From: Bugula neritina
Taxonomy: Eukaryota > Animalia > Bryozoa
DNA length: 64,000 nucleotides
Assembly (NCBI GenBank): GCA_964035545.1
Contig: OZ037766.1
Location: forward strand, 4,578,722-4,642,721
Direction: 5' to 3'
The translations under genes were made by a program, and so were the position numbers. The notes below the pieces were generated by a model that saw nothing but the letters and a program-made list of their open reading frames with translations, was not told where the DNA came from and did not search any database. Of this stretch, positions 38,512 to 64,000 are shown piece by piece. The number at the start of each line of letters is the position of its first letter. The stretch's first letter is position 1.

Positions 38512-38547
<36 letters not shown>

Positions 38548-41500
38548 GTGTGTTAGTAGTTATCTTGTAGTATCCATACATACAATACAATAACACTAAA
38601 CATATATGCTAGGTATATCTGCTACCCACCATATTACTTATATTTTTGTATACAGTTATGTATAAACATGTCAAGACCTGAACTATATAGCCTACACAGT
38701 CTTAAGTACATTTATTTTAAGCACCTGCACAATAATTAAACTATTCGCTGCCCAACCTACATTATAATATACAAGTACAACTCTCAATTTAAAGCTCTAG
38801 CATAATTATTACTGCAATAACTGCACACGCATGCATAACGTACAAATCTAGTATTATAATTATGTATTCATTACATGTCTTGTATATAATTAGAGTTATG
38901 AGTTTGTCTTCAACAGAGCAAGTCTTGTAGCAGTAATATTTAAATAAAAAGTATATGTGGTGAAATAACCTAGATTTTTGACATTGCCTTTGTATATCAA
39001 CCAAATTCACTAGAACAGAGCTGAATTAAAAGAGATTGGAATGAATATATTGATTTAGTTTGTAGTGTTTATTTTGAATTGTACAGTGTTATAGGCTGCA
39101 CTTACTGGTTGAAGGTAAAGAGCTGCATGCGACATATACAGCTCTGTTTATAGCAGTTTGTTTGTCAGGGTGAAGATAGTTTATTGATCGCTAACTACTT
39201 AATCTACCGACCGTATTCAGACTAATTAAAATTAAACTCTTTACTTTGCTAGTTTACTAGTTGATTAAAATTAGAACTCTTTACTATACTAGTTTACTAG
39301 TTGATTGAAATAAAATATATACTATTTTAGTTAACCTTTGAATTGGCCTCTGATAATAATAATGGCCTGATCACACTTCAAAAAAATAGACATTAATACT
39401 CTTATTGACTAAAAGTCAAATTGTGGAAGCAAAATCCAAAGCGGAACAGTTGAAAATGATCACATGACCAGACACTCTCTCAGCATGTTTTGCTGTTTTG
39501 TCAGCATGTAAATTTGTGCTCTGCAAAAGATAGAGAAGAGAGATAGATCTATATGTTGGCTTTTTTGTCTCAGCATCGTCACATTAGCTATGCTACAAAC
39601 TGGTTAACCAGGAAAATAGTTGCAGATAGTAGGCTGACACAATAAGACAACATATGACAAATAATATCTAATGGAATTCAATTATATAATCATTCAGTAG
39701 AAATAGAATATTCATTTCTTGTGAGAAAACCCCTATAAGAAGTTATTTTACCTTTATCTAAAATAGAGTAGTTAATGAAATAAGAAACAAGACATTGCAG
39801 AAAAAATATTATTGTATATTGAAAAATTGTTATTGTGATTGTTTGCTTAAAACTTTGAGGTGTTGTGCATTCACTTTAAAAGTTGCTATATTTGTATATA
39901 AAACTTTGTCTCTCTCTCTATTATAAACTTGACTTTAAGTTTAATCGTTGTACTCTAGAACAAAGTATTAAAAGTGCAAAGATTTACTGTTTTTTTCCAT
40001 AAATCATACATCAGCATAGCTTACAAGTTCACTTTGCTAGAAAGAAGTTTTATAATATGTTTAATTATTAGGAAGATATACTTGTGATTTTGTCTAACAT
40101 ATAGCCTGTGCTACACGATTCTTATACACAAATTCATACAAACGCAAACAATATAGAAGTATTATTCTATGCTTTTCATCATAACTATTTTGTATTTTGT
40201 AGTTTGTGAGCTTTGTATCAATCTCCTTTATCGTGATTTCCATAACTTCTTTCTGTCTAAAAACACACCCAGACCTTCGGATCCCATCAATAGAGAATGT
40301 GACCACAGATTTGGGAAATGGCACCGTGGTATCATGGTCCTTGCACAAGACTAGCACTAAACCACATATTGTTTTCTTTTACATAGAAGCAACGGCAAAT
40401 GCTTGGTTTACGTTTGAAATACTCATACGTTTTATAGTGTCGCCCAGTAAGTTTGATTTTGTACGAGATGTGATCAACATAATCGACGTGATTGCCACGT
40501 TGTCCTTCTATGCAGATATGATTATAACCATGCTGAATAGGTCACTTGGAAATGACATTCTGGAGTTTCTTAGTATGATCAGGATCATGAGGCTATTGAA
40601 GTTGACGAGACACTCGTCGGGGTTGAGAATACTCATACATACGTTCAAGGCTTCTGCCAAGGAACTCATTCTACTCATATTCTTTCTAATGCTATTCATC
40701 ATCGTCTTTGCTTCACTCATATTTTATGCTGAAAGATTGGAATACAATCCAGAAAATCATTTCACTAGCATACCCAGTGGGTTGTGGTGGGCTGTAGTTA
40801 CCATGACTACAGTAGGATATGGGGATATGACTCCTAAAACATATCTAGGAATGATAGTGGGAGGCATATGCGCTTTAATGGGTGTACTAACAATAGCTCT
40901 GCCCGTGCCAGTCATAGTGAGCAACTTTACAATGTTCTATACGCACACGCAAGCAAGATCAAAACTACCAAAGGAGAGGCGTAGCATTGTACCAGTTGAG
41001 GCTGTGCGACCTCATAGTCATGGTCACCATAGAGACTCCTCTCACATGCCTCGCAGGACATCTGCCTACCCTACTTCACACCACCCTGTAAGGCAAATAG
41101 GTAAATATAGAAACTAAGTCTAAAGTTCATATGCTGATAAGAGGCATGCATTTTGAATTCTACTGCATATTTTTCTGAGGCTTCTACTTGTTTCATACGC
41201 CACACTCTATAGCAATACTACATTTGTGTTAACAGGGTGTTGATGAAATGTGTAATATTATGCCAGGAAACTCTAAATAATTAATTATGATGGTAGTAGT
41301 AAATAGTAGTAAATAAACTCTCTAAAAACATAGAAAAGTTTTGTGACAATCATTTGAAATTGTAAATAAGTTATGAGTTTTCAGATTTTCTAGAAGTAGT
41401 AATTCACTTGAAAGCACTCGGGAATAGACCTTAGTAAGTTAGCGTTTTCAGGAACGACAACTAAATTCAACAGTGTATACATCAGTATTTCTAAATATTC

Positions 41501-43876: not shown

Positions 43877-45248
43877 GAGAATTTCAGGACTGCTTAATAC
43901 TTTATAGTGTCTGAATTTAGTTTTAGCAGTAACCTTTAGATTTTATAATACCGTATATATTTCATTCTCGGTGTTAGAATGTGTTAGAATAGGTAACAGC
44001 TTTAATGAAGGTGAAGAGTCAATGTGTGACTGTATTCTGCTTGTCATAGAGTGTGTCTCTAGGATCACAGTGCTAGCCTTCATCAAATTAGGGGAACTCA
44101 GGCTGACCAATTACATATGGAAGGACCGCTAGAGTAGTTGGAATAAATGGTAGCTTATATTTTCAGTCATGCTACCAAGATTGCCATACATTAAAGCTCT
44201 TAGACTCTCTCCCTATCCTCTTGGCCCAACAGGCTGTAATATCAGATGTATACTTCAGCTCAAAACTGTATATTTTATGTTTTACAGCAAACATCTTTGA
44301 AGCTCTACCCAAAAACACTGCAGCTAGTTGCTTTCATCAGTTAATTTGACACGCTTTCTATTTACCTGGTTCATAGATAAAACCAATTATTTATTTTTTA
44401 TTTGCATCAATGAATTATCAACTTTGTGAAATTTGCATACAGCAAATTGTGGATAATTCAGCTTATCAAATCACAGCACTGATCCACATGGCCGACATAT
44501 TATTTACAAGAAAACTCTCTTTTATTTTTGAGCAATCCTTTGCATATCTGTATGAAGCTTCAATGTATTTGTTACCAACGCAATAAGACAAATTAATTTT
44601 TATAACAAAACTAATAAATTTGCCAAAAAACTAATATTGAAGCTTGTTGAATATAATATTCATTATCATTGATCTTTAGAAGCAATATAATGAATGACAC
44701 ACTGGAAATATTTTGCATACTATATTATCATAAAAGCTTCTATGTCTGGAATGTGATGAAGTTGCAGCTATACAATTATGCATTGTGCCATTTGTTGGCT
44801 TAAAAACAAAATAAACAATTTTCCACAGCAAGTAGGAACAATGCAAAAAAAAATAAAAAAAAAATAAACGAATTTATGTCAGGTTCTCAACCAGATTGAC
44901 TTTAGAAATCTTAAGCGATCAGAAATTTAAAATCAAGTTGTAAATTTTAAGTACTTTTACTGCTTAATTTAAGTTTGAATTGATTAGGAGTCAGTTTGCA
45001 AAACTTTACAATTTTTGATTTGGTCTAATTGAGAACCTAACTAATAAATAGCATGCAGCATAAATAAGTGCTTATATATGATAAACAATATACGTAATTG
45101 AGCATGTACAAATATTTACTAACAATATATTGGACTAAACAGAGCAAAATATCATAACAGTATAAACAGTAACAAGTAAAGAGATAGTGCATCAAGTTGA
45201 GGAAACGTCATGCTTGAGCCATGGTTTATTTTGATGCCAGTCACTGTT

Positions 45249-48200
45249 TTAGCCATCCTGCTACAAAAATAAATGTATAATATTTGTTTTAAAAACTCTT
45301 GCAAATAATACAATAAATAAAGAATACAATACACTGACAACAGAATTCTAAAAATTAGTTACTGAAAGTATTTTACACCAGAAATACATTTTTTAATTTA
45401 GACAGAACTAAGTTGCATATAATATTATGTAATACGGAACAACCATATTATATAATGAAAAGTATGATAAATAAAGGGTAAACCCCAATATGCATAAACA
45501 GCAATTAACATAGAAAAGCATAACACAGCAACAAATCATGATATAATGTAATATAACATAGTATAGCATACGAGTATTATAGTACAGCATTGTATAGTAT
45601 AGCATATCATGATGTAGTATAGTATATGAGTATTATAGTGTATAGTATATAGCGTATAATATTTTATATTATGGTATAGTGTTGTATAGTACAGCATATT
45701 ATAGTATAGCACAGTGTTGTATACTACAAACATTATAGTATAGTATATTATAGTACATATATAGTATATTATAGTATAGTATATTATAGTACATATATAG
45801 TATATTATAGTATAGCATAGATTATAGTACATTAGAATGCAGCATAGAATAGCGATTTAGTAAATATAAATTTCTTACCTTCACCGCCTGAGTGGTGTAA
45901 GACGGAGTGGTAGAGACTGGAGTAGTAGAATTAGTCTCAAAACTAGGAAATATAGCCGCCCAGAAGCTATTCCATCCACTCCACCATTCTACAGGCAGAG
46001 TAGGCCAGGTGGATAGAGTGGTGGGCCAGGCCTGGGAGCTGTAAGTGGTGGAGAAGGTCCAGGGTGTTGTACTGGAACAGTTGAGTTCATCGGAGTTGTC
46101 ATCACAATCAGGTATGGAGTCGCACACCCAGTCATGCGTGATACATCCCTTGCTATCCTTGCAGGTGAACTGGTCATCCGTGCACGCACAGTTCTGCTCA
46201 TCTTCATGTTCACCACCCAAACAGTCTATTTGTCCATCACATTTCTACAAGTCAAACAATCTTGTAACAGACTTTTATATTTCAAACTTTTTATTTTATT
46301 TATCAGAAAATTTACTATGTTATTTTACTCAATCAAGTGATATATGCTTTAAAAATAGAAATTCTTACAAATGTACGTCCAATGTTGAATGACGAATCGT
46401 TAAGATATATTTTAAATAAAAAAATTACCTAGTATAAAAATCAAAGAGTTATAAGCAGGAAATGTACATATATGATTGGCTATTAGTGAGAACAGGTGGT
46501 GTTACAGTTGGTAGCCTAAGAACTTTGTATGGGAGTTACTTACCCATGCTACTGGAATGCACGGACCACCAATTATACTGTGAGTGTTGCACTTGAATTC
46601 AGTTTCCCTGCATTTAGTCTGAAATTGTAAAACATTGTTTCATAAACTCAGCCTAAACCAACATAGTTTTGTTACACTAAAAATTTTTTGTAAAATAAAG
46701 CCAATCAAATATACTAAAAACTTTCTATTATAAAACTTAACTTATCAACAAAAATTTTGCTTTAAAGCTATAAAAAATTGTATGCCATTACAGTGTAAAC
46801 AGCAAAATCAAACAAAATTTAATTCATATCGGAAAAGCATTTAATTCAAGCGTTAATATGATCTTTCATAGCTAGAAGTTTGACACAGAAAGGAGAATAC
46901 AATATTTTTAATAAGCCATTTCCCAGCTCTATAGACTTCACAGTGCACTTACAGTGTTAACGTAGCAGTGTTCTTCATCAGTGCCATCAGGGCAGTCGGG
47001 GAACGCGTCACACACCCAGTGTGGTGGTATACATTCTGTGTAGGAACCATTGCATTTCACTGTGTATGCATGACATTCCTTCATCTCTGTAACACAATTA
47101 AACACTTATTAAGAATTCATGCTCATATGAGTCATATACGGGAGAGGTAATGACCAAATATGCCATAAACACCCATTTTAGTCACACTTAACAAGTTTTA
47201 TGTCATATTCAAATGAGCTTGATGATGTCACTCATGATCGCCACAAAGCAGCATAATTCTGTTCATTGAAGATACAAAGATCATGATCTTCAGCTGAGAA
47301 TGTTATATTCTACCCTTGTGACATCATACGTCTATGTATTCAATGAGAATATTCTACCCTTGTGACATCATACGTCTATGTATTCAATGAAAATATTCTA
47401 CCCTTGTGACATCATACGTCTATGTATTCCATGAAAATATTCTGCCCTTGTGACATCATGTATTTATGTGTCCAGCAACAATATTCTACAGGCACTTAGA
47501 ATGTTAGTCTTACCGCAATACTGCTCGTCAACTGCATCTAAACAGTCTACTTCTGTATCACACCATTTAACCTCTGGTACACATTCGCCACTGAAGGGGC
47601 ACAGGTGGGTGCCAGTGTAGCAAACTATAAACACAAAACAAGTTGATGAGTTGAGAGAAACTAAACACATATCATTTTGCTGCTGCATATAAAGTGCCTA
47701 CAAGAAATACAGCACAATATGCATGTAGGGAAAAATTGGAGAACGTCAGAGAACAAAGTCTAGTTTAAAGATTATATCTAAGCCTAAATTAATTTAGGCA
47801 TATTATTTTTAGACAAAATATTAAAACAATTTTGCTAACAAAAGCAGGTTAAATTGTTAAAACCTGCAATAGCAGCTATATATTTTTTTTAACTAATAAA
47901 TATATTTTAGAAATATGCAAGGAAAAACACATTGAAATTGTTAAAAACTAATTATGCCTCAAAACATAAAAAGTTCGTTGAAGATATTGGTTGAAAGATG
48001 TATGAAGGAATAACCAGTAAACTTACCGTCAGCAGTAGTATTTACTTTAGGCAGCTTCAGACAGACATTTGGATCGGAATCTGAAGACAGTGGGAAGTCT
48101 TTGCAGTCAATCGGCAGCGTGAAATGGTAATGGTCAAAGAAGAATGAGCACTCAGTCATAGCAACTGGAATAAATAGAATAGCTCTTGCATCCGTCATAA

Positions 48201-51200
48201 GATTTTATACTTTCTAATAAAATAAGTATTTTCAACAATCTTTTGGTAGTAAATTAAGCTTTGATTGAATAAGGTAAGCATGATTTTAACAAAAAAAGCT
48301 ATAGAAATAAACACATAAACTGACTATATGGATAATATATATTTATTGCTATACATGTTTTAAATCAATATACAAATGATCAATTAGTAAAAAGATATAT
48401 CATATTTTACATCTTATATCTATATACTATTTTATACACACTACGTTTCCAAGCTTTGAATTATAAGAATTTCTTTTCATTTGATGTTTGAAAACAGTTG
48501 CATCAATGAAACCACAACTACATATTCATAGTAGGAGCATTCATACTAGGCCATAGACACGTATTAATAGTTGCAGTAGCTGAATGTGTGTGTATACCTT
48601 CACATTCCTCTCTGCATGGAGGGAGAGGAGTCTTATCTTCTGAGCACTTAGGGAAGTTGAGGGCACATGCCAGAGCTGTCATCCTGTTTCTGCACTCAGA
48701 TGTCGAGTGTAGCTGATTGAGCATGTGGACAAGATAGCTGGCCTCTGCTTGGGTGGTCTGGTGAAGGAGATTGGGGAAAGAAACTGACGTGTAGCCCAAG
48801 TCAAGAGCCGCACACACGGAGTTGTTCAAGATCTCGCAGTGGTGGTCAGGTAGTGCTATAGAAATAACAAGATTATTACACACTTATTAAACTTCTCAAA
48901 TAACAATGACTTGTAAAAGTCATTACATCTTTAAAATTATTATATTTTTATAAAATAACAAAAATAATACACCAAATAGAAAAAGAACATAAGGATGCCA
49001 TGAATTTACCAAAAAATGGCCATTACCAGTATTCTATATCATGTGACTTCTACTTTCTCATAATAATTAATGCTTATAGTAAATCTGTAACTAATCAAAA
49101 GTATTTTAACAAGTTTTAATTTACAATACTTCAGCTTTCTTTTACTAGCTGTCATCAATTCACACATTTGCTGACCTCAATCATAAGGATATATATGATA
49201 TATAGTACTGAAAGTAGTTGTTACTGTTGTTAAGCAATATTGCAGCAACGTGAACTAATTTAGACTCTAAATATAATATCTACAACGCTGGAAAACATTT
49301 GACCTGTGTAAGAACGTTTCCATGTTCAAAGATGGAATCTATTTCTTGTAATACCTGACTAATATTTAATATATAAATAATATATGATGATGATCACTAG
49401 AAATAATGGAAATGAAAATGCTTGATAAATGTCCAAATGATAGCCAACTAACCTATGGCAGGTTTGTGGGCGGGTAGAGACGTAGAGCTGTTGAGACATG
49501 TGAAGCTGGGGTTAGACTCTTGGACAAATGTCTCACAGTGCAGGTTCATCAAGTCTCTCTGCTCTTCACCGATAATGACGTGATTACATCGACTCTTGAA
49601 AGCTGTAGCAGAATAAGGTATGTATGAGAGGGGATTATTACTGCAAGGACAGACAACTTACAATGTTACTATCACACCTACTATTGTGAGAAATCTACGC
49701 CTACTTATATGCTGTGCAACTTTACCTTTATTTCCTATATTTATTTTATGCCTTTTAGCTTGATATGAGCGTAGACCATGCCAAATTCTAACAAGTTGCA
49801 TTAAAACGGGCTATTTTCATAAGTTGTCAAAATTGAATAAAACTCCTTTTTTAACAGTAATAGAGCAGCAAAAATAAAGAATATTTAAATAATAGTAATA
49901 GAGGCATTATGAACAGTTGTGGCAGCTGCAATAGTGGTAAAACCAATGAGCATAATAATGGTAGAATAATAGCCGTGAGAGTAGCTGTAGTAGTAATTTT
50001 AGGAAGTAAACTAAAAAAACTTAACTTAAGACGGAATTCAACCTTGTTATAAATAATCTAGAAATAGCCAATACTGAAACAACATAACACTCTCAAAAAA
50101 CAAGTTAATATCAGACATTAACAGAATATCAATTAGGTGCGTACTGTGACAAATATGACGACAGGGAAACAGAGGGAATCCGGATTGTTCCTGGCAAGTA
50201 GGATATCTAATAGCACAAACAAACATCATAGCCATATCGTAGCATTCGCTGTCGTTGAGGTGAGCCAGGAGTGATTCTGTGCTGATGTTCATAAGTCCCT
50301 GGATGTGAGGAGAGGCGGAGGTTTTTGTGTACGGGAGGTAGGATCTGCATGTGCTATTTTCAGCGAGTCGGTAATCGCAGCTATACTCTGGCAGGTCATC
50401 TATAATAACATAGCGACTCAACTTCAGGCACAGAGGGAAAGGATATCCTATGATGATTCATAAAAGTATAACTAAAATGACTCATAACTTCTATTAAACA
50501 TGATTCATACAAGTAATCAGTTATGATCAACACAAAACAGCTGCACGTACAACTGAGGTCGATGCAGTAATGGAGAAATTGAGAAAAGCCTGTGTTCTAG
50601 ATTAGGAATGTAGCAAAAAAAGTTATATTCTTACAAGAATTTCAACCCGCGCCCCAAACAAACATTTAATAAAAAATTATAAAACTTAGGTTATCTCAAT
50701 TTCTCCGCTACTCTGTCAACAACACTTACGATTCTGACAGTGTGTTCCTGAGAATCCGAATGGGCAAAGGCATACAGTCTGATCATGTGACATCAGTCGA
50801 CAAGTGCCCCCATTCTGACAAGGGTCGTTCAGGCAGAATGTGATGTTACTTGACGGGCCTATACAAAAACAACATAGCTGTGAATAAAACAGAGCAATAA
50901 ATTTTCTCTGTGAAAATAAATTCAACAAACTGCAAATGTAACTTTTAGTAAATTGTTTTCTTAATAAAATGTTTTCAAGTTTAAATACAAAATTTAACTG
51001 CTTTTAGCCATGCGTAGATAACTTTAAACAGTGAAATTATCAGCAAAAAAAAACAAATTACTCAACAAATTTTTGTACAAAACTTTTATACCAGTACTAC
51101 AGAATAGACAAAGATTTTGATGACATAGGTGAGCTATGAGCAGACGATTTTAATGATTTGGAAGAGTTTTAGGTGATAGTGGTCCTTTACCAAGTTACAA

Positions 51201-54200
51201 TCTACATATAACCAAAAGCTGAGTAAGGTTGCTCCATCTTGACCTAGGTTCACTTAGTTTAGTTACAGCTCATGCTAATAAGGTTGAGAATATTCACTGT
51301 GTAACACGTAGACTCGAAACACTTACAATCCCACTCGTCGGAACCATCAGAACAATCCTCTTCACCGTCGCACTTCCAATGAGGCAGCAAGCAGCTGATG
51401 GTGGGTACGAAAATATTCACGCCATTCAAGCATCGGAAAAATCCATCGGGACAAGAATCCTCGGGGTCATCTGCACAGATAAGTACATGTGTTTGAAGCA
51501 AGTCTTTAGAAAATATATACTGTAGACCAGTTGTAGAAGCAATAAGTAACCAAGTTTCTGATGAACATGATGAGACAACTCTAAAACTAAGTCAGTGTAA
51601 CTCTTACTACAATCTGCTTCATCTTCTCCACTATTGCAGTCAGTGTAGCGATCACAAACATAGTCCTCAGGAATACACTTTCCGGAGTGGCAGCGAAATT
51701 CGTCAGCGTCACATCCGCCACCGCAATCTGCATAAAAATATTATTCCATTTATTCACATTTCTCAACTCACTTTTAGTATAGATGTTCTGACAATTAAAT
51801 ATTGAATATAAATTTCCTTACTTGATTAAATGAATATGTGAAAAAATATTGAAATGGGTGAGGAAAAACTAAGTTACACACTGAACCATAAAACCAGTAA
51901 CCATCTTTGAACTGCAAAGTAAATCTATTCTATTATTACAGTCTTTAATGTTTGCAGTCCTTAAAAGTTGAGAAATTGAATTTAAACAAAAAATTTTAAA
52001 CAATACTTTTAAAAAAACTTTTTTTTCATAAATTTTACAAAATTGATATACAAAGCAAGAAAATTTCAACTGCCACCTGAAATAACTACAAAATCACAAG
52101 TATATTTTAAAAAAACACTTTCCGGACATGCTATATTCAATATTTCTGCTATGAAATAAAATATCTACTAACTTTGTTCATCGTCTCCCCCTGGGCAGTC
52201 AGCAACTGTGTCACATAGTTGAGTACGAGTAATACAGGTCTTGTTATCATTACACTTGTGCAGGTTTGAGTTACAGACTACAAAATTTAGTATAAAATAG
52301 AAACAATCTGTAATCAGGAAATTATTGCAATACCACAATATACACTGTGCCACACTTTAGTAAAGTATTGCAATATAACAATATACACTGCAGAATAAGT
52401 ACCACATATTAAGTACCACATATTATACACTGTATTTGTTTTCAAAAAAATACATTATATTTTATTAGTGATGATAGAAATACTCAATCAACTTTTATGC
52501 CACATATCAGTAAATAATATATATAATACAATCTTCTTGACAGGAATAACTTTAAAATATGAATCTATATTTTTACATGAATCTAATTGGTTAAAGAAAG
52601 CTGTCATTGATAGCTTAATTTTGCTTTATATTCTATTTTGCTGAACATTATATAACATATGAGAACACATATGAGGTACAACACATATACACACACACCT
52701 TCTGGGAGGTCTAGTATGACACAGCACATATCCACACATACCTTCTGGGAGGTCTAGTATGACACAGCACATATCCACACATACCTTCTGGGAGGTCTAG
52801 TATGACACAGCACATATCCACACATACCTTCTGGGAGGTCTAGTATGACACAGCACATATCCACACATACCTTCTGGGAGGTCTAGTATGACACAGCACA
52901 TATCCACACATACCTTCTGGGAGGTCTAGTATGACACAGCACATATCCACACATACCTTCTGGGCAATCCTTTTCATCTGCTCCATTTGGACAATTCGAA
53001 TGTCCATCACATTTCCAAGCTGATGCGATACAAGCTCCGAATGCACCGCAGCTCATTTCATTCTCTAAGCAATGACCAATAGGACACTGCACTTCATCCG
53101 ACCAATCAAGACAGTCCGGCGTTCTGTCGCACTTCTTCTCTTTTGGTATGCAAGCACCAGACGTGCATCTGAAACTGTCTGGCTCACAGGCTACAATGAA
53201 AAAGAGAATTTCCAAATCTATCGACATAAAATGATAAAGAAATTGTTGTTCTGTAGTTTTTTATTTTCTCTTGGCTTTTTGAAAAGTTATCACAACTATA
53301 AGTCATACAAAACATACTTTCATATAAAAAAAATCAAATTGCTCCCTCCGTATCTCAATAAGCTACAGGTCCAGAAACCTCGATTCATGAAAGTTGAATA
53401 CCAGATTTAACTAACGGATTCGATAAATTTGGCCATTTTGTCTATACACACATGCAAAAGCCACAAAACGAGGTCCATGCCCTTCTAGTGACATATGGAA
53501 TTTCATAAGAAATGAAACTGTGAGATATAGAGGGAGCACTGTTCAAGCAGCAAGCTATAAAAACAATTATCTTCAGTTGAAAAAGTATTATATTTGGAGC
53601 TATGGCATTACCTGGCAAAGGCTCTCTTGTCATTATACAGTTGGGATTGCTGGCATTGTTGTTATATTTAGGCATTTCATCACATTGAAGAATGATTGGG
53701 AAACCAATAGCGGACAACTCATAGGAGCAGTTGGCCTCAACCTCTTGACACACTGCAATATCACGTACAGATAGAGATATACATTCTGTGTGATATGTCA
53801 CTGTATGTGACTATTATACAACTATTGTAGGCCTATGACTATACGGCTACTATAGGACTATATATGACAATATGAATATTATATGACTATATGACAATAT
53901 GAGTATTATATGACTATATGACAATATGATTGATATATTATGACAATATGATTTTTATAGAACAATAATATGACTTTAATTTCTCTTGTTGACTACACCA
54001 ATTAGAGTATATTCAACCATATAACTTCACTAACCCAATTAAATCATTAGCTTCATAGAAATAGAAAAACTGGAGATGCACCTAGAATTTTATGAAGTGG
54101 GATGAGTGTTGCAAAAACCTAACACTTGCTTCAAATATTATAAAGACAAATAGGCCAGCATTGACCGTACATCAGTAGCAGTAAGCTTGCTGCCAGCCTG

Positions 54201-57200
54201 TATTATCATATTCAAAGCAACTCAATATATAAAGTAACGTAGATGGCTTACATTCCATGCATGGTAACATGGGTTCATCCCTTTTCTCTTGGCACTCTGG
54301 AGCCAGGAAGGAACAGGCAAAGAGCTGCATAGAATCGTGGCAGAGAGCGTGTTCACTGTGAATTCTTGAGAATATGTCCAGATATACGGATGATTCAGCC
54401 TACAACCCATCCAAAGCTCAAATATTATGCTATAAACACAGGCTAAAACCAGAACACAAAAGGTAAGGTGTGGCATTGGCGATATTTATAACATGTGGCG
54501 TGTGTGTGTTCGAGATTGTAAGAGCTATTTAGTGTGAACATGTATATATCGGCATGTTTTATTACTACAGCAACAATAATTATAAATTTTAAAATTTGAT
54601 TGTATTGAAATATAATACAATGTTGTCGAACTAAATTACATAAACCAATTAAATTAAATTGTTTAATTTATAAATAGCAAACTTCCTAATTTTCTTTTTT
54701 GTTCCGATTGCAAAATAAAATTATATTAATTTGCAAAATAGCTAGAGAAACAGGTTGGTAAAGATATAACTACTTCTCAATCAGTAGATTGACAAAAGTT
54801 CCAAGGCTGTCTAAAATTTTTAAAATTATTAACTCAAGAACCAAAGAAGATGAAACTGAAAATTTAACCTCTAGCAGCATAAAAACAGAATTTCTAAGCA
54901 TTACCTGTTTTCAATAAGATGGATTGGAATATAGAAATGTTGGGCATAATCATTATATAAATCCTCTAAAAACCACACTGTTTCAGACAGAAAATAGTAA
55001 AATAACAGAACATAGAAATAATTCAAAGCATAGAAACAATGTAACATGAAATAGGTTATACCTGCGAGACTTGTTCCACTAGATTTGGTAGAACAGTGTA
55101 GTTGTATAGGGAGCTACAGAATGGATGCTTGACTCGTTCACATCGGGGCTTGTTGACTGGGTGCAGAGGCTCGGTGAGGAACTCACTTGAAGAACTTAGG
55201 CATACGGCGTCAGGGTAGACAGACTTGTCGGGGAACTGCGTACAGTCAAAGTGATCGAGATGGGTGGCTGCCTCCCCACCCGCACATTTATGCAACAGCT
55301 CTGCAAACACAACATTACATAATATTCAGAGAAGTTCATATCTAACTTTACACTAGTGAGTAGTGCATATAGCAAGTGGCATATAAGACAATTGATTTTC
55401 AGTATAGGAGTTGTACCGCCATGCTTTAAATTTATGTTATTCAGAGTCATATAAAATGAACTTTATTTAAAATAGAAGTTCAATGATGTCTATAGAACAA
55501 TAAGAGCTATAAAATACCTCTAGAATAAGCTAACAAATGCTAAAAAGTATAACTAACCTAGACATGTATGTTGACAAGGCAGTATGGGTAATCCAGAAGA
55601 TGGCTGACAGCCGGGGAAGTTGGTGCCGCACAAGACGAGCGAGGCGACTTTGGGAGCGCACTCGTTGAGTCTGACAAACACGTCTTCCGGAACAGCGCTG
55701 TCAAAGAACAGCTGCATATCCATGGAGCTCCTAGTGTAGTTGTAATATGGCTCCAATACGTCGGCGCACCTCGGCACTAGCACACTGGTGTCGCACTTCA
55801 CAGCATGCAGGCTGAACACTACATGCAAGAAAAGCTGGTCAGTAAATCAAAAAACTATTCTGTTACAACAAACAAAATATGAAGTCAAGTATACAAAAAC
55901 AATTGCATCTTTAAGCCAATACCAGACCTAATTCATCAGAGTGTATTTTATGATTAGATTTTTAATATAGGAAATTTATAATTTAGGATAAAATAAGTCA
56001 CAAAAAACAATATTGCAAGTATGAAATTCTGCAGTATTAACAGTTTGAACAGTAGGGTTTCTGAAAGAAGCATGCCATAGCACCAACAGCATATTTATAT
56101 TACTTTTAAAACAGCTTTGTTTTTTGTGCACGAGACATTGTCTTTATCTTAAGTTAAAAAACCCTACATTAGCAACATTTTCTGAGCGGTAATACAATGT
56201 ATGTGGAATAACAGCCTACTGAGTCTGGTAGCAAACTACGTTTGTTTTAAAGGCTAAAACACAAGTTAGAGAACAAATCGCATACATTTCTGACATCTTG
56301 ATCCGCCAGTGTTTGGGGGGCATTCACACCTGAACCCGTCTATGCTTCCGGGCTCTGGGACACAAGTCCCGCCTCTGTGGCATCTTAGAACTGCGCAAGG
56401 TGAAGGACAATCCTCCTACACCAGTATGTAAACATATTATAGAAGCTTCATGGTGCAACATTAGAACATATAATAAAATAAAATAGGATATGTGTGTGGG
56501 TGTGTACAAACTTATAAACTGCATAGCTACTGTACATACATATAATCATATACTATATAATCATATTGACGTAAAGGAAATGTACTCACCTCATCACTCC
56601 CATCTGTACAGTCCTTAGAGTTGTCACACCTCCATTTTTCAGGTATACATGCTTTACCTGTATACCTATTCACTCCTGCACGACATGTGGAGTTGCCCGT
56701 ACAACCTAGAAATAAGCACATGTAGAGATTTACATTGCATAGAAAAAGTTTATAAGTATATAAAACTCTGTGATTTATATTAGCTGCTATTAGCAAGTTT
56801 ACCAACCAACCGGTACTATAGCGTTCAGTCATTACAATAAACTACTACTCACTTATCCACTTACTATATAGTAGTCATACACTGACTGTATCATAGTCAT
56901 ACAATAAACTATTACTTACTTACCATAGTAGTCACACACTCACATAGTAATACAGTGTATCATAAACTATTACTCACTTGCTGGGAGATCATTACACTTC
57001 CTTTCATCAGTGAAGTCGGGACAGTCCCAATGGCCGTCACACACCCAGTCCTTGTTTATGCACCTGCCCTGTTCACATTGGAACATTGACTCATCGCAAT
57101 GAGTAACATTCCTGCACAAAGCATGACCCTCATCACTGCCATCTTGACAGTCTTTCTCTCCATCACACTCCCAGTCCTGTTGCAAATTCAACACGTGTAC

Positions 57201-60200
57201 TTAAAAGATACAGAATTCTCATTATAAAAGTTGCATCGTCATGTTTTATGCTTATAATATAATAATAATTCAACATGTTTGGTGTGTTGATAACCAAGAA
57301 GATAGAAATATTTTCATAGGTAAATAGTCAACTATACAATTAGGCCACTCTTAACTCAATAACGGGCAGACAATAACATATTGCTATAATAAGCAAAATG
57401 GCTATGCTCCCAGGCTTTTTCTTGCAACTCTCTATGTGGGTGTGCTACAACAAAGTTTTTAACACAACGCAACTTTTTAAAAGCTGAAATTTTAAAATAT
57501 CAATCTTGAGTCAAATATGCAGTTGGTGTTGGTTGTATATTATATATCTACATTAGTTTGAAGGGAGAAAGTTTCTCCTTTTCAAGTGCAAGAAACTGCT
57601 CTATTTCCAAAAGGAGAGACTATTATACTGTCAAAAAATTATTAAATTTTTGAATAGACATTAAAAAGAGCATTTGTAAGTACACTGCAGCAATTATCTC
57701 CACTTACTTTTCGATAACAGCCAAATCCAGAAGCACACTTCACCTCATCTTCATCACAAATACCTACAGAAAAGTTTACACCAATCAAAAGAACGCTTTA
57801 AGTTACATCTCTTCAGAGTTTAACCTTGACAGCATCTCAAACTCAGAAATGCAAGATTTTCATGTTAACCACTTCCTCTAAGCCATCAATAAATTATTAT
57901 AACATTTACTTTTGTCATAAATTTTCTCTTATACAAATATAAAGAATTAATTAAAAATGACTTAATAATAGCAATTTATTGTATCACATTTCAGATGTAT
58001 GGCTTTTTCAAAAATCTTGGAACATACTGTCGCTAGGCAACCACTAGTTTACACAAACGACATGCAAGTATTCTGCACATTTAAAGACTTTCTCTCATTG
58101 ATAATAAATAAGAGGCTCTACCAAATTTGGCTAAAGATATATGCATCAAAATATAAACTTTTAAGGAAAAAATGCATCGCATATATGTATTATGCTAAGT
58201 TGAATTATTCCAAAACTGCACAATTTTTACAACTGTTCGCTTTCCCACATAGTGGATATATTTTTTAGCCTGTAAGAATATGTTTAAAGCATAAAAATAC
58301 TACTTAGAGTATCAAGTCTTCTAATATAAAACCCCTGAAGGTAGAAGACCTCTAACAGTATACATACAGTGCATCTCATCTTTAGGCGGTGAGCTTGCAT
58401 GTTTACCGGGCAAGAGAGGACAATCCCTGTAGCCATCACAAACAAATGATGATGGAATGCAGTGGCCGTTACCACAGTTGAACTCATTCCCTCTACAGGC
58501 TGCAGCGGCTGTAGGAAACAAACATAATATGTACAGTGAAATTTAACATCTTAACAAACTACATGATGTAAATAAATGTGTCGTTTCAAATCAATATTCT
58601 AATTATGGCTACATTGATAGGTACAGGAAATGTACTACAATAAAATTATTACACATGTTCTTGAAAAGTTGCTGTTAAATAAATTGAATGCAAATATATT
58701 TTATTCAAAATACAGCAAGCTAATGTAAAATGATTATACTGATATAAGGCTACAAAAGTATCAGATATACAGCAGGTAGTTAAGCAGTAAGCAATAGTAA
58801 TACTGTATAAGACCATGCTCTAAATGCTTATCAAGGACATAAACTTAGCCAGCCAACCAACCTAATGACCACAACTTAAGAAAAACCTTTCTGGCAGCAT
58901 GTAGCAGACACTTGGCAGCTATAGCTATGCATGCACATATCATTGGGACATTCTAATTAAAGATATGTTCAAAACTACAGGTATATACTGTACATATATT
59001 AAGCAGTTTATAGGGTACATACTGTACATATCAAGCAGTTCATAGGGCATATACTGTACATACATTAAGCAGTTCATAGGGCATATACTGTACATATATT
59101 CACCCTTCACCCGAACCAATCAAGCTATACATGAAGCAGCAGCATAAACAGCAACAGCAGAGAGCCATCACATAGCTGGGTGTACTTACACTGAATAGAC
59201 TATGGTCCAAAGAAAATGATGAGTGCAAAGAGTGGTGAGAGGAGATATAGGAGAGTGAATAAGCAGAGTGAAACAAAATTAGTCTACACAGCTAAACTGC
59301 AGCCATTGCCTCGACTAATCTATAAAACTCAATAAATTTTTATATTCAAATCAATTAATAAATAACTTTTATTTGGTAACAAAATGGAATTTATAAAAAT
59401 ATTACATAAAATTACAAGTTTTAAAAATGAAATAATGTTGATGCTTTTTTAATCTTAGATGATGAATAAACACGAAAATAACATCTAACTTTTTACACCA
59501 GCCAAACATCTAGGTAGACATTTGAATTCCAGTTTATGCTCAGAATGAAGCATATAATTTTTTATAAAATAAAACTGTCTGTATAACTAATACAACATGC
59601 TACAACAACACACAGTAGCACCTCTGGTACAATCACATGGGCTACTTGTGAGAGAAATAAACGTAATAGCATGATTGAGAGATCTAAGTTTATAAGGTGA
59701 AGATATTTTAGCCTATTCGAGCGAGAAACTCAAAAATAGAACCGGGAGTTGTGGTAGAGAGATTTGACCAATAGTTATCTGAAACAAAATGCGACAAAGA
59801 TTTTTTAAATCAATCAAAAGAATACCAATATTTTTCAATTTGAAACTAATATGGACGCTGATCTCGAAACACATTTTTTTTAAGCATAAATTCTTCAGTC
59901 TCGCAATACTTTTAAGCTATAAAATAAAATATTTCAGTGAGATTACAAATACTGTCGAAAATTGTTTGGAATCAATAAGATTAGTGGTTATGAAAATACT
60001 AGAATTTGAATCACCCACCACACATGACTGCCTCTTCGTCGGAGCTGTCGTCGCAGTCGGGGGCATTATCACACAGGAATTCTTTGTATATACATTCGCC
60101 ACTTCCGCACTCAAACTGGTCACCAAAGCAACCTACAGGGGAAAGTAGTTATACTTATATCTCATGCAAAATACAGGAGTTGTCTTTCCATGCACATCAC

Positions 60201-63200
60201 GTACACATAAAAGGAAATTTTTCAATGAGATTAGAAATACTTACAATATTCAAAATAGTGTAAAAGTTATAGAAAAATAGAATAAAAATAACATCAAAAC
60301 CGCTTATCATTTTTGCTAGTTTAGGTGAAGAGCTTTTTTCAGAAAAATTAAATAAGTGAAACAGATTGTTTACTATTTGGTTAGTTTTTAAACTGTTTTG
60401 TATAGAAAAATTCCACCTAGTATAAATGAAATTCAAATTTTCACTACAAAATAAAATGATGTGCAAGAGATAGCTGTTATCTTGATTTCCATAATGTCAC
60501 AAAGTTATAAATTGGAAAATTGGAACAAAGTTATAAAAATAAATTTACAAATAGAGATAACAGAACAATGCTTATCAGCATAGCTGTGAGGAAAACACTC
60601 TTCAATGTTTTTAAAAATAGTAAAATAGTTTGCAAAACAAAATTTTATCTGTTACACATATTTTTATGGAATTACACAAAACAAAATTTTGATATCACTA
60701 AGTATGCTTATATTTATAATTTTCTGGCCTGTTCACATTTTTTCACCAAAAACAGATTATACGTGATCATGGTTGCTGAAACTACTAAACGTGACTCATG
60801 TTTGACGAGTCTAAAAATGTTTAAAGAGACATATCTTTAATATAAACATTAAAAAAAAACAAAGCACTTGCCGAAACTCATTTATTTCATCATGCTTGCA
60901 TTTTTGACTATCAGTTTTTAAACAGTTATGTTTCTATGAAAACATATTGTGCCAATGTAGACATTCATTATATTGCATGTTGCGGCTCATTTACTGTTGT
61001 TTATAAAGAGAAGGCAACTCCTTAAATTTTAAAATAACACTTTCTATGGGGGCTTTCAAGTTACATCTATCGTTGAATATTAAAACTCTATAAGATTCAT
61101 GTTTATAAAATATGACCACATTTTTCAACCATGAATAAACAATAACTCTAGATTTGACATACCTTGTTTAGTAGCAGGTGGAGGTAACTGGACACAAACG
61201 TTAGGATCATCACTTTGTGGGAAATCATCACAAGTAAACGGGAATCTAAACTGCATGTGATCCATCCAATAGCCGCAGTCAAAGGCCACAGCTGTAATGA
61301 GTACGAAACATTTAGTATAATTAGAATGAAATTAGTAAATTAGTAAGACAAATTAAAACTCTTATCATGAAATAACTGCTAATCACAAATTGCAAAGTAA
61401 AATGGTAAGGTTTATTATAAACAAGCCACGAAAGATATCAATGTAAAACCAGTTTTAAGAGTAAATATATGTTCAAAATTGTATACATAAACTTCCAAAT
61501 TATCCTGCTATTTCTATCTAATTGCATTGTAACTCACTAATAATAAACATGTGAAGGCAGTATAATCGAAAATATTATTTAGAAAACAAAAAATCTTGGT
61601 GCTTGATGGCAACAGCCTTATCACACTTACTTTCACACAGGTCTTTACATGGTGGAATAGGGCCAGTTCCTTCTGCATTGCATTCTGGGACAGCCAGAGC
61701 ACAGCCAAAAGCTTGCAAAGACGGGTTACACTGGGGCATATTACTATGAGCATACTCAAACTGTCCCACAAACCAAGCAGCCGTCGACTGAAATAAACCA
61801 TCACCATTACAACATACTTTCTTTGTTATGCTACAGAAGAAGCATGATCAGTATATTGGCAATAAAATATTAGATAAGTTTCAACTCAATACAAAATATT
61901 GTAGACGTGACTGTCACCTGATGAGTCTGGTTAAAGTAATTTGGTAGGTACGTCGTGTTGTAACCCAAATGTTCACAGAAACCAATCTTCAACTCTTGGC
62001 AACCCAACTCAGAACTCTGGCCAGCTGCAAACACACATGTTATAGGTCATACAATCACAGAACAAGGGATAATAACCATTAGCTATGATTGATGATCTAG
62101 TTTCACAGCTTGTCTATGCATAACAGAGTGTGCAAAGCTTCACTACATTCACCCTACCTAAGTAGCATATAAATAAATTACAGACAACATCTATATAATA
62201 AGAAACTATTAACTCTCACGTGAAGGAGGGGCTAAAGTGACTGTGGTGTGCTCTAGTTTGAAACACTCAGCATCGGGGTAGAGATAGTCGTCTAGTAACG
62301 TGTCGCAGTCAATCAGCTGGTCAATAGCTCGATCTTCACTAAACTCGTGAGCACATTTCGATCGAAACTCTACAATTCAACACATAATTTCCACAATCTA
62401 AACACACACAAAAATTTTTACATTTCAACCACTCAAACACTATTCTGTCTGTTAACACTAATAAGCTAAAATTGCCATTAGCACTGGCCAATGTGCAAAG
62501 CTTACCTCTGCACATGCTCTTGCATGGGAACACTGGGAACGAGAAGGAACCACATTGTGGGAGTGCATACTGACACAAGAACTCTGCTGCATGTTCATAA
62601 CACACATTGAACCTGTTTAAACCATTCTACAAAACAGATGCAACGCTGCACAGTTGTGATGTAATAAATTGCAATTATTCATTATCTGCTCTTGGAAGTT
62701 GGAGCATTACTAACAGTACTAGTATGAAATATTGTTCATAGTATATACAGCAGATGAAAAGCACATGCTGCATCATCTTGTGGTATCCATGCACCATCTA
62801 ATTTTCGATTTAAATGTCATCTAACATCTAACATAAGCATTGTAAATTCTATAAGTTGCAATTGAATCAACTAAGTCCAAAAATCTAGGTATTAGATTCC
62901 TGCTTCAAGTTTCGAAAAAAAATTATTTTATTTGCACTATAAACAAATAATTCTTTTAACCAACTTATATATTTATTAAAATCTTTAAGATTCACATAAA
63001 ACATAGTATGCCTGTGATATCATGGTCATGTACTGACTAAATGCACCTACCACATCGCAAGGTTGTAGGTAGTACAGTGTAAGACTATACCTACCACATT
63101 GTAACACTATTCTTACCACACTGCAAGGCAGCACTTACTACAGTGTAGAACTATACCTACTACAGTGCAAGATTGCAACTAGCACACTGTAACACTGTAC

Positions 63201-63391
63201 CTACTACAGTATCTACCACACTATAACACTGTACCTACTACACAGCTAAACTGTTCTTACCACAATGTGAGGCATAATCAGCTGTTGACTGTCAAGTGTA
63301 GACACTGTGTTGATACGAGACTCTCCGAGAGGAGCCTTGCATTCTTCTATCGTGATTTCAGTGTTGCAGCTTACCTCTGGCAACCTCTCAA
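45249..63391 (-). CDS. Large modular extracellular protein with 6 Frizzled-type CRDs, 14 LDLa repeats, 2 EGF and an S/T/W-rich tail (5' end beyond the window)
   Basis: Exons: 63391-63261, 62626-62506, 62369-62220, 62024-61918, 61787-61631, 61291-61163, 60132-60019, 58508-58368, 57763-57708, 57176-56978, 56705-56590, 56415-56286, 55818-55558, 55300-55062, 54399-54252, 53752-53612, 53190-52957, 52277-52173, 51727-51608, 51470-51327, 50858-50730, 50399-50145, 49602-49453, 48855-48598, 48164-48027, 47624-47514, 47086-46953, 46618-46544, 46244-45879, 45260-45249 (last exon less certain). All join in frame. LDLa motifs CDG..DC.DGSDE, Fz motifs YN.T.LPN/FPN...C....P.C.....PC...C, EGF CQNGGTC..C.C..GFSG..C. 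Confidence 0.85.
45540..45830. repeat. Degenerate (TATAG)n-like low-complexity tract
   Basis: Short TATAG/TAGCA units in the last intron of the Fz/LDLa gene. Confidence 0.8.
47305..47462. repeat. 44-bp tandem repeat, about 3.5 copies
   Basis: TATTCTACCCTTGTGACATCATACGTCTATGTATTC at 47306, 47350, 47394 and partially at 47438. Confidence 0.9.
52690..52965. repeat. 43-bp minisatellite, about 6.5 copies, containing the exon end and 5' splice site
   Basis: Unit CCTTCTGGGAGGTCTAGTATGACACAGCACATATCCACACATA, period 43. Confidence 0.95.
58980..59100. repeat. About 33-bp tandem repeat, 3-4 copies
   Basis: CATATACTGTACATAT..AAGCAGTTCATAGGG units. Confidence 0.8.
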
Positions 63392-63399
63392 CTGTAATC

Positions 63400-63660
63400 A
63401 GCAGTAATAACAGTGTATATATGTTTCTAGCAGTAATAACAATGTATGTAAGTTCTTAGTAGTGACATAAGTATACATACGCGTAAGTTTCTAGTAGTAA
63501 TAACAGTGTATATCAGTTTTTAGTAGTAATAACAGTGTATATCAGTTTTTAGTAGTAATAACAGTGTATATCAGTTTTTAGTAGTAATAACAGTGTATAT
63601 CAGTTTTTAGTAGTAATAACAGTGTATATCAGTTTTTAGTAGTAATAACACTGTATATAA
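63400..63660. repeat. About 29-bp minisatellite (TAGTAGTAATAACAGTGTATATCAGTTTT)
   Basis: Several identical units at 63491-63655, with degenerate copies toward 63400 next to an acceptor. Confidence 0.9.
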
Positions 63661-64000
63661 ATTTTCAGCAACAGGTAATGATATATTGCTATACATCTTA
63701 CTTCATATGAAATGAAAGTAAGTAGCTATTTTGACACAGAGATTAATTTATAAGCCATACTAGCGGAATTAACTATCTAATGCTTATATTATTCTCACAC
63801 TAAGAAACAGTGTTGGCATTAAAGTAAAACCTTAAAACGCTTATGCTCTGTCTAATCTTATGAATCTTATCCTGTGTGGAGTAATTTATTGTGTAAAATA
63901 AAAGCCAATAAGGTTTCTAAATTATCTAAGACATAATTATCACTTTAGTAACTATCTATAACTATTAGTAATATGACACAGACTATCCACTATAAGCTCA

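What the first reader, a model, noticed from the sequence alone, without database searches (positions are those of the whole stretch)
45249..63391. Protein made of a repeated super-module [FzA-FzB-LDLa x5-EGF] with no protease or membrane anchor at the C-terminus
Seen: module 1 (63391-56286) is Fz,Fz,LDLa x5,EGF; module 2 (55818-50730) is Fz,Fz,LDLa x5,EGF; module 3 (50399-46080) is Fz,Fz,LDLa x4, followed by an S/T-rich tail and a stop. The first CRD of each pair is a divergent type (LPEVSC and LPEYSC starts; YPDAEC and YPDAVC ends). The second is canonical ([24 protein letters not shown]; SDDPNVC and DSDPNVC). This points to ancient duplication of the whole unit. Known: corin combines two Fz CRDs with LDLa repeats but ends in SRCR plus a trypsin domain; sFRPs and Frizzleds have one CRD. 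Inference: a multivalent Wnt or lipid-ligand binding scaffold, decoy or carrier that I do not recognise as a named family.
Basis: partly seen in the sequence, partly recalled or inferred. Interest (0 to 1): 0.8.

Follow-up and report, generated by a model that had tools for sequence, protein, structure and literature searches.

The report
Protease-less corin-like membrane receptor gene
This is one large animal gene, probably from a bryozoan, for a cell-surface protein anchored at its front end that carries four repeats of a [quoted passage not shown] unit and no enzyme domain. Relatives in another bryozoan and a brachiopod are auto-labelled "corin-like" or "uncharacterized" and I found no study of them.

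Summary

RNA contigs from four studies reproduce nine introns exactly. These include the module 2 to module 3 joint and a last 618-nt intron. They place the stop at 45251-45249, followed by a 3'UTR ending near 45012. So the C-terminus has no protease and no anchor.

The window cuts the gene. Upstream lie a fourth module, a mucin-like stalk, a SEA domain with a GSVVV self-cleavage motif, a type II membrane anchor, and a cytoplasmic FxNPxY-type motif. That makes at least 45 exons and about 2,320 residues, with 8 CRDs, 19 LDLa and 3 EGF. The Met exon was not found.

Collinear relatives exist in Watersipora ("corin-like", split into three gene models) and Lingula. The Lingula protein has the tail motif, TM, SEA, stalk and Fz/LDLa repeats, and no trypsin domain.

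The gene is a non-catalytic relative of corin-type type II proteins, not a secreted decoy. Ligand and function remain inferred: a multivalent capture or endocytic receptor, possibly shed. I rate it a new variant of a known kind, of moderate interest.

The parts
61163..63391 (-). Module 1 CRD pair. FzA exons: 63391-63261, 62626-62506, 62369-62220. FzB exons: 62024-61918, 61787-61631, 61291-61163.
   Evidence: Pfam Fz hits. Phase-compatible GT-AG junctions. FzA profile hits.
56590..60132 (-). Module 1 LDLa x5. Exons: 60132-60019, 58508-58407, 57763-57708, 57176-56978, 56705-56590. The second repeat is atypical.
   Evidence: Pfam Ldl_recept_a, E 2e-11 to 3e-18. Junctions.
56286..56415 (-). Module 1 EGF exon.
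   Evidence: Pfam EGF, E 5.5e-5. It ends two residues after the last Cys in phase 1, like the other two EGF exons.
53612..55818 (-). Module 2 CRD pair. Exons: 55818-55558 (FzA), 55300-55062 (end of FzA plus start of FzB), 54399-54252, 53752-53612.
   Evidence: Pfam Fz. Split-codon phase-1 donor at 54252. 39-48% identity and collinear with Watersipora P0015.
51327..53190 (-). Module 2 LDLa x5. Exons: 53190-52957 (two repeats), 52277-52173, 51727-51608, 51470-51327.
   Evidence: Pfam Ldl_recept_a, up to E 3e-22. Split-Cys junction 51327>50858.
50730..50858 (-). Module 2 EGF exon.
   Evidence: Pfam EGF, E 2.4e-5. Its donor at 50730 is joined to 50399 in RNA contigs of four runs.
48027..50399 (-). 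Module 3 CRD pair. Exons: 50399-50145, 49602-49453 (FzA); 48855-48598, 48164-48027 (FzB).
   Evidence: Pfam Fz, E 7e-8 and 2.3e-14. All four introns are seen as joints in RNA contigs. The FzB exon is closest to Frizzled-8/10/2/7 CRDs in the PDB, E 2.5e-7.
46080..47624 (-). Module 3 LDLa x4. Exons: 47624-47514, 47086-46953, 46618-46544, and the first part of 46244-45879.
   Evidence: Pfam Ldl_recept_a. RNA joints 47516>47087, 46953>46618 and 46544>46244.
45879..46079 (-). S/T- and Trp-rich C-terminal tail, the rest of exon 46244-45879.
   Evidence: Translation. The donor at 45879 is used in the RNA contigs. This is the most divergent part between genome and RNA contigs.
45249..45260 (-). Last coding piece: three codons plus the TAA stop at 45251-45249.
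   Evidence: RNA joint 45879>45260 in four runs. Translation.
45012..45248 (-). 3' untranslated region. Contigs of three runs end at 45012 and of the fourth at 45028.
   Evidence: Table 8.

Best explanation
Shown:
- A single minus-strand gene of at least 45 exons, about 30.6 kb from the TM exon to the stop, runs out of the window's upper end. It encodes a protein of about 2,320 residues.
- From the N-terminus the protein has a short cytoplasmic tail with an FxNPxY-type motif, one transmembrane helix (type II orientation), a SEA domain carrying the GSVVV self-cleavage motif, and an S/T/P-rich mucin-like stalk.
- Four diverged copies of a super-module follow: divergent CRD, Frizzled-like CRD, five LDLa repeats, one EGF. 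The last copy has four LDLa and no EGF. A short S/T-rich tail ends the protein.
- There is no catalytic domain.

Inferred:
- It works as a non-enzymatic cell-surface binding platform. The calcium-type LDLa repeats and the eight CRDs offer many ligand sites held away from the membrane by the stalk.
- The tail motif couples it to clathrin-mediated uptake, as in LDL-receptor family members.
- The SEA cleavage makes the ectodomain a non-covalently held, sheddable piece.
- It belongs to a conserved bryozoan and brachiopod family that shares its front half with corin-type type II serine proteases but has no protease.
For: Domains and gene structure:
- Domains are identified by Pfam.
- All 44 junctions are GT-AG and phase-compatible, and the coding length sums to 6,960 nt, a multiple of 3.

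Transcript evidence:
- Nine junctions, the stop and the 3' end are seen in RNA contigs from four studies. Contigs run on upstream into module 2.

No protease:
- No trypsin or SRCR exon appears in the 45 kb downstream. The next genes there are a plus-strand Kv channel and others.
- No trypsin-like exon lies near any Fz locus of the genome.

N-terminal part:
- The TM segment, the first half of SEA (Pfam E 4.4e-5), the GSVVV motif and the stalk lie upstream.
- This region is collinear with Lingula XP_013390977.1. That protein has the same tail motif type, a TM at 76-94, SEA (E 6.7e-11), a stalk and Fz/LDLa repeats, with no trypsin.

Orthologues and fold:
- The Watersipora locus carries SEA-Fz-LDLa-Fz-LDLa, then LDLa-EGF-Fz-Fz-LDLa5, then LDLa, as three adjacent same-strand models.
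- The module 2 first CRD groups with the Watersipora first CRD at 96/95 support.
- An AlphaFold model of the Watersipora CRD pair matches Frizzled CRDs with TM about 0.8 by target. Only the second CRD is confident.
Against: - The initiator exon was not found.
- The link from the TM/SEA exons through modules 0-1 rests on splice-site prediction and homologue collinearity. I could lay RNA contigs only on 45000-50950.
- The second half of SEA gets no Pfam hit by itself.
- NPxY signals are classically described in type I tails (from my own knowledge), so their use in an N-terminal type II tail is an assumption.
- No ligand is known. In the one alignment to Frizzled-8 that I read, the motif I recall as part of the lipid site is not obviously conserved (plus memory).
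- Function is wholly inferred from domain content.
Confidence: 0.6

Rival explanations
1. Soluble or shed multivalent Wnt or lipid-ligand decoy or carrier, essentially the first reader's reading. The ectodomain acts in the extracellular space like a giant sFRP, after SEA cleavage and release or from an alternative start.
For: - The second CRD of each pair resembles Frizzled and sFRP3 CRDs in sequence.
- In the orthologue it resembles them in fold.
- The SEA GSVVV motif allows release of the ectodomain.
- There is no C-terminal anchor.
Against: - A type II anchor and a conserved cytoplasmic sorting-type motif precede the ectodomain, and both are kept in Lingula. This argues for a membrane-bound life at least at first.
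- Wnt binding is untested.
- Corin and MFRP CRDs are not established Wnt binders (my own knowledge).
Confidence: 0.2
2. Structural or adhesive mucin-like surface or matrix glycoprotein. The cysteine-rich modules serve mainly as rigid spacers or calcium-binding and cross-linking units, for example in cuticle or attachment, rather than as receptors.
For: - A mucin stalk, a SEA domain, an S/T-rich tail and a large repetitive ectodomain.
- Many marine invertebrates carry uncharacterized multi-CRD arrays with varied partners.
Against: - The acidic calcium-cage motifs of the LDLa repeats and the CRD cysteine patterns are kept across about 30-40% identical modules and across phyla.
- The tail motif is conserved.
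- Both fit ligand binding and trafficking better than filler.
Confidence: 0.1
3. A true corin orthologue whose SRCR and protease exons are missed, through an alternative 3' end or an assembly gap.
For: - NCBI names the orthologues 'atrial natriuretic peptide-converting enzyme-like'.
- Type II anchor plus Fz plus LDLa is corin's front half.
- Mollusc and rotifer-relative homologues with SEA and/or several Fz domains do carry a trypsin domain.
Against: - RNA contigs of four studies splice to a stop and end at about 45012.
- No trypsin-like open frame appears on either strand in 45 kb downstream, and a plus-strand Kv channel gene follows.
- No trypsin hit lies near any Fz locus genome-wide.
- The Lingula orthologue models also end without a protease.
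Confidence: 0.05
4. Several separate genes, or a gene-model artefact, rather than one transcript.
For: The Watersipora annotation splits the orthologous locus into three models. I have no RNA evidence for exons upstream of 50950.
Against: - Modules 2 and 3 are joined in RNA contigs. One 2.07-kb and one 2.5-kb contig continue upstream.
- Every EGF-to-next-CRD junction has the same position and phase.
- No stop, promoter-like start or signal peptide appears between modules.
- Lingula has a single model spanning anchor to repeats.
Confidence: 0.05

Closest known systems
Corin (atrial natriuretic peptide-converting enzyme), a type II transmembrane serine protease
   Same: - Type II N-terminal anchor.
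- Fz CRDs combined with runs of LDLa repeats, including a run of five after a CRD.
- Automatic annotation of the orthologues as corin-like.
- On a weak tree, corin Fz1 falls with the first-CRD type and Fz2 with the second (support 52/84).
   Different: - No SRCR and no trypsin domain.
- CRDs come as adjacent pairs, not separated by LDLa.
- The unit is repeated four times and includes EGF.
- SEA and a mucin stalk are present.
- The tail carries an FxNPxY-type motif.
MFRP (membrane frizzled-related protein)
   Same: A non-catalytic type II membrane protein with an S/T/P-rich stalk, LDLa repeats and a Fz CRD (architecture recalled from my own knowledge).
   Different: MFRP has CUB domains and a single C-terminal CRD. 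Here there are no CUB hits, eight CRDs, EGF domains and a SEA domain.
Unnamed lophophorate proteins: Lingula anatina XP_013390977.1 / XP_013385766.1, and Watersipora subatra XP_067937043.1 with its two neighbouring models
   Same: - Lingula: collinear tail motif, TM, SEA, stalk and repeated Fz-Fz-LDLa units without protease.
- Watersipora: a SEA-Fz-LDLa-Fz-LDLa model, then 39-48% identity across a whole module including EGF.
   Different: - The Lingula model has three units with 3-4 LDLa each. Pfam and my EGF profile report no EGF, and only one CRD is detected in its first unit.
- Watersipora is annotated as three separate genes.
- None has been studied, as far as my literature searches reach.
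LDL-receptor family endocytic receptors
   Same: Clusters of LDLa repeats with EGF domains, and an [FY]xNPx[YF] motif in the cytoplasmic tail.
   Different: No YWTD propeller was found. The topology is type II rather than type I. CRDs and SEA are present.

Membership tests
[quoted passage not shown] | C-terminal trypsin-like serine protease domain | tested here: not met
   RNA contigs splice 45879>45260 to a stop at 45249 and end near 45012. No Trypsin hit in any exon. No trypsin-like frame downstream or near any Fz locus.
[quoted passage not shown] | Scavenger-receptor cysteine-rich domain before the protease | tested here: not met
   No SRCR hit in the Pfam scans of the exon pieces. Most exons are accounted for by Fz, LDLa, EGF or SEA hits. 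The others (the third Fz exons, TM, stalk, second SEA half) are placed by their cysteine pattern and alignment to paralogous exons or to Lingula.
[quoted passage not shown] | Order Fz1-LDLa(5)-Fz2-LDLa(3) | tested here: not met
   The order here is Fz-Fz-LDLa5-EGF, repeated.
[quoted passage not shown] | Type II N-terminal membrane anchor | tested here: met
   A hydrophobic stretch of about 23 residues preceded by basic residues, in the exon at L004:1810-1588, upstream of all ectodomain exons. It is collinear with the Lingula TM. It is a prediction, with no RNA evidence for this exon.
MFRP | CUB domains alternating with LDLa, and a single C-terminal CRD | tested here: not met
   No CUB hits. 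There are eight CRDs, none C-terminal.
Frizzled / sFRP | One N-terminal CRD followed by a 7TM bundle (Frizzled) or a netrin-like domain (sFRP) | tested here: not met
   No 7TM or NTR hits. The transcript ends after an S/T-rich tail.
LDL-receptor family | YWTD beta-propeller/EGF precursor-homology region and type I topology | tested here: not met
   No Ldl_recept_b hits. The anchor is N-terminal.
Unnamed lophophorate type II SEA-(Fz-Fz-LDLa)n family (Lingula, Watersipora) | N-terminal [FY]xNPx[YF] tail, TM, SEA with a G-S cleavage motif, S/T/P stalk, repeated paired CRDs plus LDLa runs, no protease | tested here: met
   Collinear local alignments of the TM, SEA and stalk exons to Lingula P0136. 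Architectures. Collinear 39-48% identity to Watersipora P0015, plus its SEA-bearing neighbour model.

The most novel reading that the evidence does not exclude
A lophophorate-specific class of non-catalytic type II receptors. It joins paired Frizzled-type CRDs to LDL-receptor-type ligand repeats and an LDLR-type internalisation motif. It would act as a high-avidity capture-and-clearance receptor for Wnts or other lipid-modified ligands, tunable by SEA-mediated shedding. That would be a way of shaping morphogen gradients not described in model animals.
Probability: 0.15. Interest if true: 0.65.

Novelty: new variant of a known kind. Interest (0 to 1): 0.4.

Why it matters
The front half of corin-type membrane proteases (anchor, SEA, CRDs, LDLa) exists in bryozoans and brachiopods as a large stand-alone binding protein without an enzyme. 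It was built by whole-unit duplication that predates the split of the two bryozoans compared here.

It is a concrete, testable candidate for an unexplored type of surface receptor with eight Frizzled-type domains. It also corrects misleading "corin-like" labels and a three-way split gene model in public annotation.

More broadly, the search shows that multi-CRD arrays with diverse partners are common and entirely uncharacterized in marine invertebrates. Partners include a polycystin channel, Ig, MAM, a C-type lectin and trypsin.

Tried and rejected
2. Automatic exon cores from paralogue alignments were too noisy. I set the cores by index instead.
3. Forcing whole Cys codons into exons gave poor junctions for two introns. 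Inspection showed split-Cys phase-1 donors.
4. My small FzA and FzB HMMs did not classify CRDs of distant homologues reliably. I make no A/B claim beyond the bryozoan and brachiopod sequences.
5. The CRD tree is weak: only 1 of 14 inner branches is well supported. I use only label clustering and the module 2-Watersipora pairing.
6. MAFFT misplaced first-CRD exon fragments onto the second CRD. I dropped them from the alignment used for folding. As a result the first CRD in the model is low-confidence and I draw nothing from it.
7. Four literature searches found no paper on this architecture. The brachiopod Wnt paper does not mention it.
8. The initiator exon could not be identified from sequence alone.
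9. The spliced protein was never joined. All searches were exon by exon by reference, so no whole-protein architecture search, whole-protein fold or signal/TM predictor was run on a joined sequence.
Full report
**What is in the window**

The region is AT-rich (about 33-36% GC) and has no long ORFs. The minus strand carries a string of short open pieces rich in cysteine.

Pfam scans of these pieces, each given by reference, return Fz, Ldl_recept_a and EGF and nothing else of note. Fz reaches E 2.3e-14 for 48521-48883. Ldl_recept_a reaches E 3e-22 for 52886-53260. EGF is found at 56269-56415 and 50719-51003.

- Module 1: Fz, Fz, LDLa x5, EGF.
- Module 2: the same.
- Module 3: Fz, Fz, LDLa x4 and an S/T-rich tail.

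The second LDLa of module 1 is atypical. Depending on which of two phase-1 donors is used (58407 or 58368), it is either cut short after the fifth Cys or carries an insert.

**Gene structure**

I scored GT-AG pairs between successive open pieces, requiring compatible phases and no stop in split codons.
- All junctions have a compatible pair.
- Domain-boundary introns are overwhelmingly phase 1, as expected for shuffled LDLa and EGF modules.
- Two junctions that looked poor turned out to use donors that split a Cys codon: 54252>53752 and 51327>50858.
- The three EGF exons all end two residues after the last Cys in phase 1, then join the next first CRD.
- Exon lengths from the TM exon to the stop sum to 6,960 nt. 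That is a multiple of three and about 2,319 codons in 45 exons, with a median intron of about 470 nt.

I computed lengths and phases only.

**RNA evidence**

The index found runs with small shares of the stretch's words. These were labelled with the same organism code, or as a "symbiont metagenome" RNA-Seq library. I laid contigs of four runs from four studies on 45000-50950.

The contigs are 91-98% identical to the genome, so they come from another strain or a sibling species. They show these joints exactly:
- 50730>50399
- 50145>49602
- 49453>48855
- 48598>48164
- 48027>47624
- 47516>47087
- 46953>46618
- 46544>46244
- 45879>45260

The last joint removes 618 nt. The large last exon therefore does not read into the in-frame stop at 45825.

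Contigs of three runs end at 45012, and of the fourth at 45028. One 2.07-kb and one 2.5-kb contig continue upstream beyond module 2's EGF exon. So modules 2 and 3 are one transcript, and the mRNA ends without any further domain.

Downstream on either strand I see only other genes:
- a plus-strand Kv channel with the TVGYG pore signature, at 35.7-41.1 kb;
- a minus-strand bromodomain gene;
- a CRELD-like EGF gene;
- a plus-strand kinesin.

**The rest of the gene**

The window is G000:C2:4578722-4642721. In the next 12 kb (L003, L004) the same strand carries:
- a fourth module (module 0) with the same order: FzA, FzB, LDLa x5, EGF;
- an S/T/P-rich stretch of about 80 residues;
- two exons of a SEA domain. 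The first half gets Pfam SEA at E 4.4e-5. The second half has no Pfam hit but contains the GSVVV self-cleavage motif known from MUC1-type SEA domains (my own knowledge);
- an exon with a hydrophobic segment of about 23 residues preceded by basic residues. Before that lies a hydrophilic stretch containing F-N-N-P-I-Y, which matches the FxNPxY internalisation motif of the LDL receptor (my own knowledge).

That exon starts at a good acceptor in phase 0 and has no Met. At least one short 5' exon is therefore missing, and I could not identify it. A dihydrouridine-synthase-like gene lies further upstream on the same strand.

The protein is thus a type II membrane protein with 8 CRDs, 19 LDLa and 3 EGF.

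**Two CRD types and module history**

- A profile of the first CRDs (A1) scores 100-119 bits on three of this gene's four first-CRD exons. Module 1's, which is split over two exons, scores 65.5 and 42.3. It scores about 26 bits on its second-CRD exons and at most 34.5 bits anywhere else in the genome.
- Pfam Fz scores the second type higher. In the PDB the second type is closest to Frizzled-8/10/2/7 CRDs (E 2.5e-7). The first type reaches only E about 0.02.
- First CRDs of different modules are 32-39% identical.
- In a small tree, position labels are clustered: 3 changes against 7.3 for shuffles, with none of 200 shuffles as low. Module 2's first CRD pairs with the Watersipora first CRD at 96/95. 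So the unit was already duplicated before these two bryozoan lineages split.
- Corin Fz1 falls with the first type and Fz2 with the second, but at support 52/84, which is only a hint.
- Exon fusions differ between modules. For example, the end of FzA and the start of FzB share one exon in module 2, and two LDLa share one exon in module 2. Introns were therefore lost or gained after duplication.

**Relatives**

The profile search over 1.84 billion representatives gave 134 hits.

Exon-sized fragments 54-84% identical to my exons are ORFs from DNA or RNA contigs of related bryozoans.

*Watersipora.* P0015 is Watersipora subatra XP_067937043.1, named "atrial natriuretic peptide-converting enzyme-like". 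It is collinear with module 2 at 39-48% identity and reads LDLa2-EGF-FzA-FzB-LDLa5. Its locus holds three adjacent same-strand models: SEA-Fz-LDLa-Fz-LDLa (1,097 aa), then P0015, then a 138-aa LDLa piece. This is most simply one gene split by the annotation.

*Lingula.* Lingula anatina XP_013390977.1 (1,426 aa, "uncharacterized") and XP_013385766.1 ("corin-like") share an architecture:
- Y-D-N-P-G-F in the tail;
- a TM at 76-94;
- SEA at E 6.7e-11 with a G-S-V motif;
- an S/T/P stalk;
- then Fz-LDLa4-Fz-Fz-LDLa4-Fz-Fz-LDLa3, with no trypsin.

*Relatives that do carry a trypsin domain:*
- true corin from a bird (P0073/P0139; named, its trypsin domain from my own knowledge rather than a scan here);
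- Mytilus "corin" (SEA, Fz x4, trypsin, MAM);
- Aplysia and Seison proteins.

*Other multi-CRD arrays.* These occur in coral, shrimp, sea cucumber, starfish and amphioxus. In Ptychodera, 12 Fz and 19 LDLa sit in front of a REJ-GPS-PLAT-polycystin channel. All are unnamed.

*In this genome.* I found no trypsin-like exon near any non-frizzled Fz locus.

**Structure**

An AlphaFold model of the Watersipora CRD pair was built from a nine-row alignment. Mean pLDDT was 70.7. The second CRD reached 80-93, and the first CRD was poor in its N-terminal half. The model matches Frizzled-7/5/8/4 CRDs with TM about 0.8 by target. This confirms the fold of the second CRD type only.

**What it most likely does**

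Shown: the architecture, the 3' end, the absence of a catalytic domain, and conservation of the front-end elements in a brachiopod.

Inferred:
- It is a surface binding platform, held out on a mucin stalk.
- Its ectodomain is cleaved in the SEA domain and can be shed.
- Its tail motif recruits the clathrin machinery.

The ligand is unknown. Wnt or another lipid-bearing ligand is a reasonable guess for the Frizzled-like CRDs. However, the motif I recall as lining the Frizzled-8 lipid site is not obviously kept in the one alignment I read. Corin and MFRP CRDs are also not established Wnt binders (my own knowledge).

**Organism (inference only)**

The evidence points to Bugula neritina or a close relative:
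- The closest named relative is a cheilostome bryozoan.
- The genome is 216 Mb, against 214-221 Mb reported for Bugula neritina (PMC7576161).
- RNA holders include a "symbiont metagenome" study.

**Verdict**

But it is an N-terminally anchored membrane protein, not a free scaffold, and collinear orthologues are already in public databases under automatic names.

I rate it a new variant of a known kind, a non-catalytic relative of corin-type and MFRP-type type II proteins. Interest is moderate.

Noticed in passing
window 52678-52964: A 43-bp unit repeated 6.7 times at 98% identity. It starts inside exon 53190-52957 and copies that exon's end together with its splice donor. The intron therefore begins with a row of near-identical candidate donors spaced 43 nt apart, which is out of frame.
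   Followed up: partly
window 63403-63665: A 29-bp tandem array of 8.9 copies in the intron between the module 0 EGF exon and module 1. Arrays about 70% identical occur on at least five other contigs of the genome, so it is a dispersed satellite family.
   Followed up: no
P0001 (Ptychodera flava XP_070577742.1, 4406 aa): A hemichordate polycystin-1-like protein (REJ, GPS, PLAT, PKD channel) whose N-terminal 2,250 residues are an array of 12 Fz and 19 LDLa domains. It could be a real fusion architecture or a merged gene model.
   Followed up: no
G000:C1:30877000-30883100, minus strand (L025/L026): A second gene in this genome with a Fz CRD followed by at least three LDLa exons. No trypsin-like exon lies within 20 kb. 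It may be an MFRP-like or truncated corin-like gene.
   Followed up: partly
L007 (Watersipora subatra OY755161.1:37675074-37712494): The orthologous locus is annotated as three adjacent same-strand genes: 1,097 aa with SEA-Fz-LDLa-Fz-LDLa, 693 aa, and 138 aa. This probably splits one gene.
   Followed up: partly
window 88-7483 (+), 13.4-17.5 kb (-), 20.5-26.5 kb (-), 35697-41114 (+): Neighbouring genes read from open frames: a kinesin motor, a CRELD-like EGF protein, a bromodomain protein, and a voltage-gated K+ channel with a T1 domain and the TVGYG pore.
   Followed up: no
window 47305-47489: A 44-bp tandem repeat of about 4 copies inside the intron between the first and second LDLa exons of module 3.
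   Followed up: no
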